From Dimorphilus gyrociliatus (lineage: Eukaryota > Animalia > Annelida), in assembly GCA_904063045.1 (NCBI GenBank), contig CAJFCJ010000003.1:1674001-1738000 (forward strand): a stretch of DNA of 64,000 bases, given 5' to 3'. Below the pieces are notes generated by a model. It ran no database searches. It was not told where the DNA came from and saw only the letters and a program-made list of their open reading frames with translations. Shown piece after piece: positions 23,015-24,328 of the stretch. Position numbers and translations under genes: made by a program. Position 1 is the stretch's first letter, and the number at the start of each line of letters is the position of its first letter.

Positions 23015-24328
23015 ATGGCTGAAAAAGCTTTTGACTCCTGTGTCGATTTTTGGAGATTTAAAAAACTTTTAAAATTCCTAGAATTTGCAAAAGGCAATGG
23101 AACTTCTTTAATAACTCTATTAATTCCTCAAAAAGATCAAATCAGTAGAGTAACAAGAATGTTAGGCGAAGAACTTGGAACAGCATCTAGTATCAAGTCT
23201 AAGCTCAACAGACAATCGGTGGAATCTGCGATAACATCAATTTTACAAAAATTAAAATTATACAAATGTGTGCCTAAAAATGGACTTGTAATATTTTCTG
23301 GAACGGTAATTACTAAAGAAGGAAAAAATAAAAAGCATATTCTAGATTTCGAGCCTACTAAACCAATGTCTGATAAATTATACTTGTGTGATAATAAATT
23401 TTATATAGAACCACTTAAATCAATGTTGCGTGAGGAGGAAAGTTATGGATTTATTATAATAGATGGACAAGGGACCCTATTTGCAAATGTTTCGGGTAAC
23501 GCTCGAACAATACTTCAAAAATTTTCTGCTGGTTTGCCAAAAAAGCATGCAAGAGGTGGCTCATCGGCTGCGAGATTCGGACGCGAGAGATTATTGAAAC
23601 GTCAAGCCTACATTAAGAAGGTTGCAGAAACGGCTAAAGATTGTTTTATAAATGCTGAGCTAAAAGCTAATGTTTCAGGTATTATTGTAGCCGGTAGTGC
23701 AGAATTGAAGACGGATTTAATTAAATATGACCTCTTGGACAATAGGATAAAGGAGAAGATTATTGAAGTTGTGGATATTGAATATGGTGATGTCATAGGC
23801 TTAAATAGAGCTATTGATTTGGCCGCAGAAAAAATTGGTAATTTGCATTTTGTAAAAGAAAAAGCCATCATAAGGAATTTTTTTGATTGTATTCAGCGAG
23901 ATAATGGTAAATATTGCTATGGATGTGAGGATACGATGGAAGCTCTGAAAAAGGGAGCAGTAGAAACTTTGATTTGTTGGGAAGATTTGGAGGTTATGTA
24001 TTTCAAATTAAAAAATTCCAGAGAGGAAATATTCACTACTCATTATTTATCTCCGAGAGAAGCTCAGAATTTAAATATTTTTAAGGATAGTAATACTGGT
24101 TTTCGTTTGGAACTTGTCGAGCAAGAATTATTAGTTGAATATCTGATAGAAAAGTATTCTAAATTTGGAACTGATATGAAAATAATTACTAATGGAACAC
24201 AAGAAGGCAAACAATTTATAGCAGGCTTCGGGGGAATAGGAGGCATACTTCGATATAAAATGTCTTTTTCTAATTCAATAAATGAAGAAAACGAAGAGGA
24301 CTTTAACCTAGATGAATATGATCTGTAA
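23015..24328 (+). CDS. ETF1: Intronless divergent eukaryotic release factor 1 (eRF1) paralog, 437 aa, with GGQ->GGS and NIKS->SIKS
   Basis: Single ORF with all three eRF1 domains: GNGTS, GTASSIKS, LYLCDNKF, LPKKHARGGSSAARF, YVKKVAE-like YIKKVAE, GFGGIGGILRY, and an acidic tail. The symbol names the family; this is probably not the canonical ortholog. Confidence 0.95.
   Translation: MAEKAFDSCVDFWRFKKLLKFLEFAKGNGTSLITLLIPQKDQISRVTRMLGEELGTASSIKSKLNRQSVESAITSILQKLKLYKCVPKNGLVIFSGTVITKEGKNKKHILDFEPTKPMSDKLYLCDNKFYIEPLKSMLREEESYGFIIIDGQGTLFANVSGNARTILQKFSAGLPKKHARGGSSAARFGRERLLKRQAYIKKVAETAKDCFINAELKANVSGIIVAGSAELKTDLIKYDLLDNRIKEKIIEVVDIEYGDVIGLNRAIDLAAEKIGNLHFVKEKAIIRNFFDCIQRDNGKYCYGCEDTMEALKKGAVETLICWEDLEVMYFKLKNSREEIFTTHYLSPREAQNLNIFKDSNTGFRLELVEQELLVEYLIEKYSKFGTDMKIITNGTQEGKQFIAGFGGIGGILRYKMSFSNSINEENEEDFNLDEYDL

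What the first reader, a model, noticed from the sequence alone, without database searches (positions are those of the whole stretch)
23555..23563. eRF1 paralog has lost the catalytic GGQ (now GGS)
Seen: codons GGT GGC TCA give KKHARGGSSAARF where canonical eRF1 has KKHGRGGQSALRF, within an intact 437-aa ORF that keeps the eRF3-binding C-terminal motifs. Established: GGQ is invariant in class-I release factors, positions water for peptidyl-tRNA hydrolysis, and its Gln is methylated by HEMK2/N6AMT1; GGQ mutants such as AAQ trap termination complexes. Inference: this may be a pseudo-catalytic or attenuated release factor that competes with eRF1 to alter termination, readthrough, NMD or ribosome rescue. 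Gln->Ser needs at least two nucleotide changes (CAR->TCA), which argues against a single sequencing error.
Basis: partly seen in the sequence, partly recalled or inferred. Interest (0 to 1): 0.9.

Follow-up and report, generated by a model that had tools for sequence, protein, structure and literature searches.

The report
Expressed eRF1 paralog with GGS motif
The tiny annelid Dimorphilus gyrociliatus carries, beside its normal translation-termination factor eRF1, a second transcribed and evolutionarily maintained copy. That copy keeps every universally conserved eRF1 residue except the catalytic glutamine (GGQ is now GGS), so it is probably a natural release factor with impaired or altered peptide release.

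Summary
Window 23555-23563 reads GGT GGC TCA (Gly-Gly-Ser) inside an intact 437-aa, three-domain eRF1 ORF (23015-24328, + strand).

The window is Dimorphilus gyrociliatus (GCA_904063045.1). A canonical eRF1 with GGQ and NIKS (DgyrCDS5328) lies on another contig, so this gene is a paralog and not the only eRF1.

- **Real and transcribed:** contigs from four RNA runs cover the CDS, including an independent 2024 coral metatranscriptome. None differs at the GGS codons.
- **Very divergent:** it is about 50% identical to every eRF1, whereas canonical animal eRF1s are 86-93% identical to one another. No ortholog was found.
- **Not decaying:** dS is saturated and dN/dS is at most about 0.2. Simulated neutral drift to the same divergence always produced at least 6 stop codons.
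- **Specific loss:** it keeps 31 of 32 columns that are at least 95% conserved across eukaryotic eRF1s. The single exception is Q185S.
- **Second change:** N61S (NIKS to SIKS) nearly abolishes release activity in human eRF1.

Best reading (about 0.45): a selectively maintained binder of stop codons and the A site with reduced or altered peptide release. The mechanism is inferred and its origin is unresolved. A few other GGQ-less eRF1-like proteins exist in the databases, and I found no published description of them.

The parts
23015..24328 (+). Complete intronless CDS of the eRF1-like paralog (437 aa plus stop), with N, M and C eRF1 domains
   Evidence: ORF. Pfam eRF1_1/2/3. 51% identity to human eRF1 over residues 5-435, E about 3e-142. 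AF2 model pLDDT 90.6, best match eRF1 in the eRF1-eRF3 ribosome complex 5lzt (TM 0.86).
23555..23563 (+). GGT GGC TCA = G181 G182 S183, in place of the catalytic GGQ (human G183 G184 Q185)
   Evidence: No variant in four RNA runs. This is the only one of 32 near-universal eRF1 columns that is changed.
23189..23191 (+). AGT = S59, so NIKS is now SIKS (human N61S) in the stop-codon U1-recognition loop
   Evidence: N occupies 84% of this column in the broad alignment, and S occurs naturally in 5 of 74 sequences. [quoted passage not shown]
23999..24001 (+). Y329 (human R330Y), one partner of the minidomain/C-domain stacking pair
   Evidence: The R330-W377 stacking is described in PMC5119991. Both partners are Tyr here, which may be a compensatory pair. 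This is an inference.
24140..24142 (+). Y376 (human W377Y), the second partner of that pair
22801..23014 (.). Short divergent promoter region plus 5' UTR. The upstream minus-strand RRM gene's RNA contigs end at 22800. The paralog's RNA contigs begin at 22901 (X3) or 22957 (X5).
   Evidence: table 8. Gene calls.
24329..24488 (+). Probable 3' UTR. There is an AATAAA at 24396-24401, and the X5 and X6 RNA contigs end at 24485 and 24488.
   Evidence: The 3' end is inferred from contig breaks and was not mapped.
23621..23678 (+). 58-nt GT..AG segment inside the CDS that is spliced out in one run (X5). Removal shifts the frame and gives a 205-aa product ending just after the GGS loop.
   Evidence: Joint 23618>23677 '(cut +2)', depth 10.7, one contig, shorter side 26 nt. 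Consequence computed. The support is weak.

Best explanation
This is a genuine, transcribed and selectively maintained but very fast-evolving second eRF1 gene of Dimorphilus gyrociliatus.

What it keeps:
- the eRF1 fold;
- the stop-codon pocket residues T32, E55, K63, Y125, C127 and F131;
- the basic residues of the GGQ loop and helix (K179, R189, R192);
- both glycines;
- the eRF3-binding C-terminal motifs.

From this I infer that it still enters the ribosomal A site with eRF3 and swings its M-domain tip into the peptidyl-transferase centre.

What it has lost is the Gln185 side chain (now Ser) and Asn61 (now Ser). Gln185 positions and selects water and is the site of HEMK2 methylation. Asn61 reads U1 of the stop codon.

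The most likely consequence is a factor that binds stop codons or the A site with strongly reduced or altered peptide release. It would then modulate termination by canonical eRF1, through competition for eRF3 and the A site, slower release, or uncoupling of stop recognition from release. It would not itself act as a standard release factor.

Shown here: the sequence, its transcription, the existence of the canonical copy, long-term constraint, and the specificity of the loss.
Inferred: ribosome and eRF3 binding, reduced catalysis, and the regulatory role.
For: - **Sequence and domains:**
- **Canonical GGQ/NIKS copy elsewhere:**
- **Transcription:** spliced joints and a zero-depth intron in the neighbouring gene show that runs X3, X5 and X6 are RNA. 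The CDS is covered without differences, at depth 123 against 518 and about 600 for the neighbours in X3. The independent metatranscriptome X1 covers the GGS site.
- **Constraint:** dN 0.44 and dS at least 2.3 (saturated), so dN/dS is at most about 0.2. Neutral simulation to 50% identity gave a mean of 17 stops and 0 of 2000 intact ORFs. There are only two one-residue gaps against the canonical protein.
- **Graded retention:** the paralog matches the consensus at 97, 89, 68, 49 and 28% of columns from the most to the least conserved class. It keeps 31 of 32 near-universal columns, losing only Q185.
- **No degenerate domain:** the N, M and C domains lose metazoan-invariant residues at similar rates, 28, 35 and 27%.
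- **Fold:** the AF2 model is confident in all three domains and superposes on pre-accommodated eRF1 in the eRF1-eRF3 complex.
- **Literature:** N61S almost abolishes RF activity but not eRF3 GTPase stimulation (PMC3632111). Loss of the conserved Gln is the criterion by which aeRF-1 superfamily members are called catalytically inactive (PMC6514570). HEMK2 needs G-Q-X3-R (PMC10804810).
Against: - A Gln-to-Ser change need not kill catalysis. [quoted passage not shown]
- SIKS occurs naturally in several GGQ-bearing eRF1s, so N61S may be tolerated in this sequence context.
- No ortholog was found, so recent constraint on this lineage could not be measured.
- The only two polymorphisms seen, V368I and K383E in X1, are both nonsynonymous.
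- A frameshifting splice form exists in one run.
- Nothing here tests binding, release or any regulatory effect.
Confidence: 0.45

Rival explanations
1. It is still a working, though weaker or specialised, release factor. GGS retains enough hydrolytic activity because the backbone NH and both glycines are intact. The paralog would then terminate translation in a particular tissue, stage or codon context.
For: - Both glycines, S186, R189, R192 and all stop-codon pocket residues are kept.
- The Gln backbone amide is catalytic (PMC6742477).
- A paper title listed in PMC2613156 reports incomplete loss of activity on Gln mutation in human eRF1.
- Natural eRF1s with SIKS plus GGQ exist.
- The gene is under long-term purifying selection.
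Against: - Gln185 is invariant in 245 of 245 canonical eRF1s and in all 60 divergent full-length eRF1s used in the broad alignment. Selection on bona fide release factors therefore does not tolerate its loss.
- The protein combines Q185S with N61S, which alone nearly abolishes activity in human eRF1.
- A fully canonical eRF1 is present to do the housekeeping job.
Confidence: 0.25
2. It is a non-catalytic A-site occupant of idle or stalled ribosomes, acting in dormancy or rescue. This would be analogous to Pelota/Dom34 or to bacterial Balon, and perhaps works with ABCE1. Loss of the Gln would make occupancy safe for any attached peptidyl-tRNA.
For: [quoted passage not shown]
- The fold search returns Balon-ribosome hibernation complexes and a CCDC124-80S-eRF1 idle-ribosome complex among structural relatives.
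- The C domain is as well kept as the N and M domains.
Against: - The stop-codon recognition residues E55, K63, Y125, C127, F131 and T32 are all conserved. That would be unnecessary for a codon-independent rescue or dormancy factor. Pelota has a different N domain.
- There are no expression data tying the gene to eggs or dormant stages.
Confidence: 0.1
3. It is a transcribed gene now in early decay. Constraint was lost recently, after a long functional history, and GGS, SIKS and the frameshifting splice form are symptoms of that decay.
For: - Both polymorphisms seen are nonsynonymous.
- A frameshifting splice isoform occurs in X5.
- The branch is extremely long.
- No ortholog is known.
Against: - The 437-codon ORF is intact with full-length homology and only two single-residue gaps.
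- 0 of 2000 neutral simulations stayed open.
- Only one of 32 near-universal residues is lost, and retention is graded by conservation class.
- RNA is present in four runs from three studies.
- Two SNPs carry no statistical weight.
Confidence: 0.08
4. It is an artefact: a sequencing or assembly error at the Gln codon, or contaminant DNA.
For: None found.
Against: - Four RNA runs, including an independent sample, match the codons exactly.
- The change needs two base substitutions relative to CAA.
- The gene sits in a 3.2-Mb contig between spliced animal genes.
- Its GC content (33%) and GC3 (24%) match the host-like window.
Confidence: 0.01

Closest known systems
Canonical eRF1 (ETF1 / Sup45), including Dimorphilus DgyrCDS5328 (CAD5116441.1)
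   Same: - Same three-domain architecture and length.
- GTS, YxCxxxF, E55, K63, both glycines, R189, R192 and GFGGIGGILRY are present.
- The acidic C-terminal tail is present.
- The predicted fold superposes on ribosome-bound eRF1 (TM 0.86).
   Different: - Only about 50% identical, whereas animal eRF1s are 86-93% identical to one another.
- GGQ is GGS and NIKS is SIKS.
- 65 of 215 metazoan-invariant positions are changed.
- It cannot be a HEMK2 Gln-methylation substrate.
Engineered eRF1(AAQ)/(AGQ) catalytic mutants used to trap termination complexes
   Same: Full-length eRF1 with a disabled or altered GGQ tip that still binds stop codons, eRF3 and ABCE1 (PDB 5lzv and 3jag titles).
   Different: - Those mutants alter the glycines, and any mutation of the glycines is reported to abolish release (PMC5799190).
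- Here the glycines are intact and only the Gln side chain is lost.
- This one is a natural, evolutionarily maintained gene.
Pelota / Dom34
   Same: A paralog of eRF1 that lacks the catalytic Gln, binds the A site with an eRF3-like GTPase and does not release peptide (PMC2613156, PMC6514570).
   Different: - Pelota has a different N domain and a truncated M-domain tip with no GG loop.
- It is ancient and universal.
- This protein matches Pelota only at E = 3e-05 against 1e-142 for eRF1, and it keeps the full stop-codon-reading N domain.
Catalytically inactive bacterial aeRF-1 homologs (baeRF-1 families; Balon hibernation factor)
   Same: aeRF-1 fold without the catalytic Gln. They are thought or shown to occupy the A site as non-catalytic regulators (PMC6514570; Balon complexes).
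   Different: - They are bacterial and very distant (13-16% identity).
- They have different partners.
- There is no evidence that this animal protein acts in dormancy.
Other natural GGQ-less eRF1-like proteins seen here: Anaeramoeba flamelloides KAJ6253512.1 (DTQ), Paramacrobiotus XP_055334035.1 (VGHRS, N domain replaced), and a 945-aa protein from a Logan assembly of run ERR1740129 (GGS)
   Same: Lineage-restricted, divergent eRF1-like proteins in which the GGQ tripeptide is degenerate. One of them has the identical GGQ-to-GGS change.
   Different: - They are not orthologs. The GGS protein from ERR1740129 is closer to canonical eRF1 (40%) than to this paralog (36%), and it has lost NIKS and YxCxxxF and gained a 500-aa extension.
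- The others also have altered N domains or have lost the glycines.
- None turned up in my searches of the literature.

Membership tests
eRF1 (class-I eukaryotic release factor, aeRF-1 family) | Three-domain architecture eRF1_1 / eRF1_2 / eRF1_3 with full-length homology | tested here: met
   Pfam E-values of 1.7e-24, 7.1e-33 and 1.3e-28. Residues 5-435 align to human eRF1 at E about 3e-142. AF2 pLDDT 90.6, TM 0.86 to 5lzt eRF1.
eRF1 (class-I eukaryotic release factor, aeRF-1 family) | Catalytic GGQ tripeptide at the M-domain tip | tested here: not met
   The motif is GGS. Gln is present in 245 of 245 canonical sequences and in all 60 divergent full-length eRF1s of the broad alignment.
eRF1 (class-I eukaryotic release factor, aeRF-1 family) | NIKS stop-codon recognition motif | tested here: not met
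   The motif is SIKS (N61S). K63 is kept. S occurs at this position in 5 of 74 diverse eRF1s, so the feature is not absolute.
eRF1 (class-I eukaryotic release factor, aeRF-1 family) | GTS and YxCxxxF motifs and E55 of the stop-codon pocket | tested here: met
   T32, S33, E55, Y125, C127, N129 and F131 are all present.
eRF1 (class-I eukaryotic release factor, aeRF-1 family) | eRF3-binding determinants (C-domain GILRY region, acidic tail, M-domain R192) | tested here: met
   GFGGIGGILRY, the acidic ...FNLDEYDL tail and R192 are conserved at sequence level. Actual binding was not tested.
eRF1 (class-I eukaryotic release factor, aeRF-1 family) | Stop-codon-dependent peptidyl-tRNA hydrolysis | not testable with these tools
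   This needs a reconstituted termination assay.
Pelota / Dom34 | Sm-like N domain in place of the codon-recognition domain, and a truncated M-domain tip without the GG loop | tested here: not met
   The N domain is eRF1_1 with GTS and YxCxxxF, and the GG loop is full length. Pelota matches only at E = 3e-05.
Processed pseudogene / dead retrocopy of eRF1 | Disrupted ORF or neutral substitution pattern, with no transcription | tested here: not met
   The ORF is intact. dN/dS is at most about 0.2. 0 of 2000 neutral simulations stayed stop-free. Conservation is graded by column class. The gene is transcribed.

The most novel reading that the evidence does not exclude
Animals, and independently other eukaryotes, have repeatedly evolved eRF1 paralogs that recognise stop codons but do not release the peptide. 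Examples seen here are a tardigrade, Anaeramoeba, and an unidentified organism in run ERR1740129 that carries the same GGS. In this reading the Dimorphilus protein is a natural eRF1(AAQ)-like factor. It docks on stop codons with eRF3 and holds or re-routes the ribosome instead of terminating, towards readthrough control, ABCE1 splitting without release, ribosome storage, or transfer to a nucleophile other than water. That would be a previously unrecognised layer of termination control.
Probability: 0.2. Interest if true: 0.85.

Novelty: new variant of a known kind. Interest (0 to 1): 0.6.

Why it matters
GGQ is treated as universally invariant in class-I release factors, and loss of its Gln is the criterion used to call family members catalytically inactive. 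Until now the consequences of removing that side chain in eRF1 have been studied only with engineered mutants.

Here evolution has done the experiment. The full-length eRF1 keeps all other universal residues, is transcribed, and has been maintained for a long time beside a normal copy.

If it binds stop codons without normal release, it would be a natural modulator of termination. It would also be a ready-made tool for separating stop recognition from hydrolysis. The independent GGQ-less eRF1-like proteins seen in other lineages suggest the phenomenon may recur.

If it turns out to release peptide well, that would show that the Gln side chain is dispensable in a eukaryotic context, which is also informative.

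Tried and rejected
1. **Sequencing error:** rejected by the RNA contigs of four runs.
2. **Sole eRF1 of the genome:** rejected. The first two database searches did not list a Dimorphilus canonical eRF1. A third search, with an annelid query, found DgyrCDS5328.
3. **Orthologs of the paralog:** none above about 53% identity in the 5.8-billion-protein index. None in the 1.84-billion representative library, the viral contigs or the JGI metagenome contigs. A lineage-specific dN/dS was therefore impossible.
4. **Origin:**
   - The ML tree puts the paralog inside Metazoa (88/93), but on a branch of length 10.
   - AU tests reject neither a sister relationship to the Dimorphilus canonical gene (p = 0.38) nor a position with the non-metazoan sequences (p = 0.53).
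   - Sharing of rare residues (1 of 12 with the host canonical protein) and metazoan signature columns (2 metazoan, 4 outgroup, 5 other) carry no signal.
   - The origin is unresolved. No foreign donor was identified.
5. **Retrogene argument from the absence of introns:** weak, because the canonical gene has a single 64-nt intron. No shared flanking genes indicate a segmental duplication.
6. **Adineta and Culicoides 'best hits':** P0002 and P0003 scored high only because they are internally duplicated gene models of canonical eRF1.
7. **Literature:** searches for described GGQ-less eRF1 paralogs or retrogenes found none. PMC60236 (Seit-Nebi 2001) was not held, so quantitative Q185-mutant activities could not be cited.
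8. **Earlier notes of this scan:** they held no canonical eRF1 entry.
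Full report
**Observation.** Window 23555-23563 reads GGT GGC TCA. It lies in an uninterrupted ATG-to-TAA ORF at 23015-24328 (+) of 437 aa. The peptide KKHARGGSSAARF occupies residues 176-188, and Ser183 is encoded at 23561-23563. Pfam recognises all three eRF1 domains, at 1.7e-24, 7.1e-33 and 1.3e-28. The protein aligns end to end with human eRF1 (residues 5-435, 51% identity, E about 3e-142), against E = 3e-05 for Pelota.

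**Whose genome, and is there a normal eRF1?** The exact protein is encoded on NCBI assembly GCA_904063045.1, contig CAJFCJ010000003.1. A genome paper lists that assembly as Dimorphilus gyrociliatus, a miniature annelid. Two database searches did not list a Dimorphilus canonical eRF1. A third, using the tubeworm Lamellibrachia eRF1 as query, returned DgyrCDS5328 (P0227, CAD5116441.1). It is 440 aa long and 90% identical to the query, with TASNIKS and KKHGRGGQSALRF intact. It sits on a different contig, between actin and OSTMP1-like genes. Its gene has just one 64-nt intron, after nucleotide 95. The GGS gene is therefore a paralog. Its lack of introns says little about how it arose, and the two loci share no neighbouring genes.

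**Is the base call real, and is the gene expressed?** Contigs of four public runs were laid on 21600-27300.
- Three runs of uncertain type (X3, X5, X6) are shown to be RNA by the data. They skip three GT..AG introns of the upstream minus-strand RRM gene and have zero depth in its 303-nt intron.
- All three cover the paralog's CDS with no differences. X3 has one contig spanning 22901-25463 at depth 123, against 518 and about 600 for the flanking genes.
- X1, a 2024 coral metatranscriptome from a separate study, has a contig at 23458-23677 that crosses the GGS codons without a mismatch.
- The species' canonical gene has CAA at the homologous codon, so two substitutions separate Gln from Ser.

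Sequencing error and lack of transcription are both excluded.

**How unusual is the change?**
- All 245 other eRF1 sequences retrieved carry KKHGRGGQS.
- Among 149 representatives of clusters at 50% identity from 15 billion proteins, 139 have GGQS.
- Of the 10 others, about half lack or garble this region (fragments or doubtful gene models).
- The others that align through the loop are an Anaeramoeba protein (DTQ), a tardigrade Paramacrobiotus eRF1-like protein (VGHRS, N domain replaced), a 945-aa protein from a Logan assembly of run ERR1740129 (GGS, N-domain motifs lost), and a Morella rubra gene model with GGK that aligns only in part.
- The second GGS protein is closer to canonical eRF1 (40%) than to the Dimorphilus paralog (36%), so its loss was independent.

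**Is the gene under selection?** The paralog is about 50% identical to every eRF1, including its host's own, with only two single-residue gaps. Canonical animal eRF1s are 86-93% identical to one another.
- Against the host canonical CDS, dN is 0.44 and dS at least 2.3 (NG86). Identity at four-fold sites (0.37) is barely above the expectation from base composition (0.29), so dS is saturated and the overall dN/dS is at most about 0.2.
- Random substitution of the canonical CDS down to 50% protein identity gave on average 17 in-frame stops, never fewer than 6 in 2000 runs. The Poisson probability of no stops is about 4e-8.
- In an alignment of 74 diverse eukaryotic eRF1s, the paralog matches the consensus at 97, 89, 68, 49 and 28% of columns from the most to the least conserved class.
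- Of the 32 columns conserved in at least 95% of sequences, it keeps 31. These include T32, E55, K63, Y125, C127, F131, K179, G183, G184, S186, R189, R192 and L413. The one exception is Q185S.
- The three domains lose metazoan-invariant residues at similar rates, 28, 35 and 27%.
- Arg330 and Trp377 are reported to stack and restrain the minidomain (PMC5119991). Both are Tyr here, which looks like a compensated pair. That is an inference.
- An AlphaFold2 model is confident throughout (pLDDT 90.6, pTM 0.79). It superposes best on eRF1 in the ribosomal eRF1-eRF3 complex (5lzt, TM 0.86, rmsd 3.0).

This is the pattern of a protein kept for an eRF1-like structural and interaction role, with a targeted change at the catalytic residue. 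It is not the pattern of a decaying copy. One caveat applies: with no ortholog available, constraint in the recent past cannot be measured. The only two polymorphisms seen, V368I and K383E in X1, are both nonsynonymous. Two sites carry no statistical weight.

**Second functional hit.** NIKS is SIKS (AAT to AGT). In human eRF1, N61S causes almost complete loss of release activity at all three stop codons but leaves eRF3 GTPase stimulation at 102% (PMC3632111). Several natural GGQ-bearing eRF1s do have SIKS, so the effect depends on sequence context.

**What Q185S is likely to do.**
- The Gln is described as the catalytic residue that directs water. Its absence is the criterion for calling aeRF-1 superfamily members inactive (PMC6514570).
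- However, structural work assigns catalysis to the Gln backbone amide (PMC6742477), and the side chain is described as having a packing role (PMC5799190).
- From my own recollection, which I could not verify here, small side chains at this position in bacterial RF1 lower hydrolysis only modestly and relax the preference for water as nucleophile (Shaw and Green 2007).
- Ser cannot be methylated by HEMK2, which needs G-Q-X3-R (PMC10804810).
- The safest statement is therefore 'attenuated or altered' release, and not 'dead'.

**Mechanism proposed.** All basic residues of the loop and helix are kept (KKH.R...R..R.R..KR), as are both glycines, the stop-codon pocket and the eRF3-binding motifs. I infer that the protein still forms a complex with eRF3, enters the A site at stop codons and accommodates into the peptidyl-transferase centre. 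There it hydrolyses peptidyl-tRNA poorly, or with altered chemistry. In a cell that also has canonical eRF1, this makes it a modulator or competitor of termination (confidence 0.45). The rivals are:
- a weak but genuine, specialised release factor (0.25);
- a non-catalytic occupant of idle or stalled ribosomes, by analogy with Pelota or Balon (0.10);
- a gene in early decay (0.08);
- an artefact (0.01).

**Origin.** The ML tree places the paralog within the metazoan clade (88/93), but on a terminal branch at the upper limit of length (10, against a median of 0.12). AU tests reject neither a sister relationship to the host canonical gene (p = 0.38) nor a position among the non-metazoan sequences (p = 0.53). 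Sharing of rare residues and clade-signature columns is uninformative. An old duplication of the host gene is the simplest reading, but it is not demonstrated. No viral or other donor was found.

**Context.** The 5' ends of the paralog's RNA contigs (22901 or 22957) lie 100-156 nt from the end of the divergent RRM gene's contigs (22800). The two genes therefore share a short bidirectional promoter region. In a genome this compact (PMC7854359), that arrangement alone is not evidence of co-regulation.

**Comparison with the known, and novelty.** The protein works like, and mostly is, an eRF1. It fails the family's two name-giving motif tests (GGQ and NIKS), so I file it as an eRF1-derived paralog and not as a bona fide release factor. 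It is not Pelota. My literature searches found no description of GGQ-less eRF1 paralogs in animals. A 2008 survey of eRF1 paralogs calls GGQ universally conserved in a/eRF1 (PMC2613156). I rate it a new variant of a known kind, with interest 0.6. The sequence-level case is strong and would surprise a specialist. The function is untested, and the gene is so far known from one species.

Noticed in passing
window 23621-23678: A 58-nt GT..AG segment inside the paralog's CDS is spliced out in run X5 (depth 10.7 against 16-23 for the flanking contigs). X1's contig ends exactly at 23677. The segment is homologous coding sequence (VAETAKDCFINAELKANVS). Its removal shifts the frame and gives a 205-aa product ending 3 residues later. 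This could be unproductive or regulatory splicing, or noise. The evidence is one contig with a 26-nt shorter side.
   Followed up: partly
window 25123-25320 (minus strand); transcript contigs about 24936-25486: A separately transcribed unit lies downstream of the paralog, with distinct contig depths and an adapter-tagged end at 24936. It holds a 65-aa ORF beginning MGCGLS (a myristoylation/palmitoylation-like N-terminus) that was not among the called genes of this locus. It runs convergent to the eRF1-like gene.
   Followed up: partly
window 24116 and 24161: The independent metatranscriptome X1 differs from the assembly at two CDS positions, G>A (V368I) and A>G (K383E). Both are nonsynonymous and lie in or just after the C-domain minidomain. 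There were no synonymous differences in about 460 nt of CDS covered.
   Followed up: partly
L003 78-2915 (Logan assembly of run ERR1740129): A 945-aa protein whose C-terminal 430 residues are eRF1-like and carry KKHGRGGSS, the same GGQ-to-GGS change. NIKS and YxCxxxF are lost, and a roughly 500-aa N-terminal extension is added. It is closer to canonical eRF1 than to the Dimorphilus paralog, so the loss of the Gln was independent.
   Followed up: partly
P0384/P0397/P0398 (Paramacrobiotus, XP_055334034-37) and P0258/P0396 (Anaeramoeba flamelloides): A tardigrade 'eRF1-like' gene has a replaced N domain and VGHRS in place of GGQS. An Anaeramoeba eRF1 paralog has KSSKDTQS in place of KKHGRGGQS. 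These are further natural eRF1-derived proteins without a GGQ, and none turned up in the literature searches I ran.
   Followed up: no
window 23999-24001 and 24140-24142: R330 and W377 (human numbering) are reported to stack and restrain the eRF1 minidomain. Both are replaced by Tyr in the paralog, which may be a compensatory pair.
   Followed up: partly
That would be a second release-factor-family protein with an altered catalytic motif in the same animal. I did not examine it.
   Followed up: no
P0002 (Adineta steineri, 642 aa), P0003 (Culicoides sonorensis, 567 aa), P0121 (Zostera marina, 760 aa): These database eRF1 entries are over-long. P0002 and P0003 contain internally repeated eRF1 segments. 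They look like gene-model or assembly artefacts, and the repeats inflate their scores.
   Followed up: partly
L002 4096-4159: The canonical Dimorphilus eRF1 gene retains only one 64-nt intron, in the codon of the Gly in GNGTS. This fits the intron loss reported for this compact genome.
   Followed up: yes
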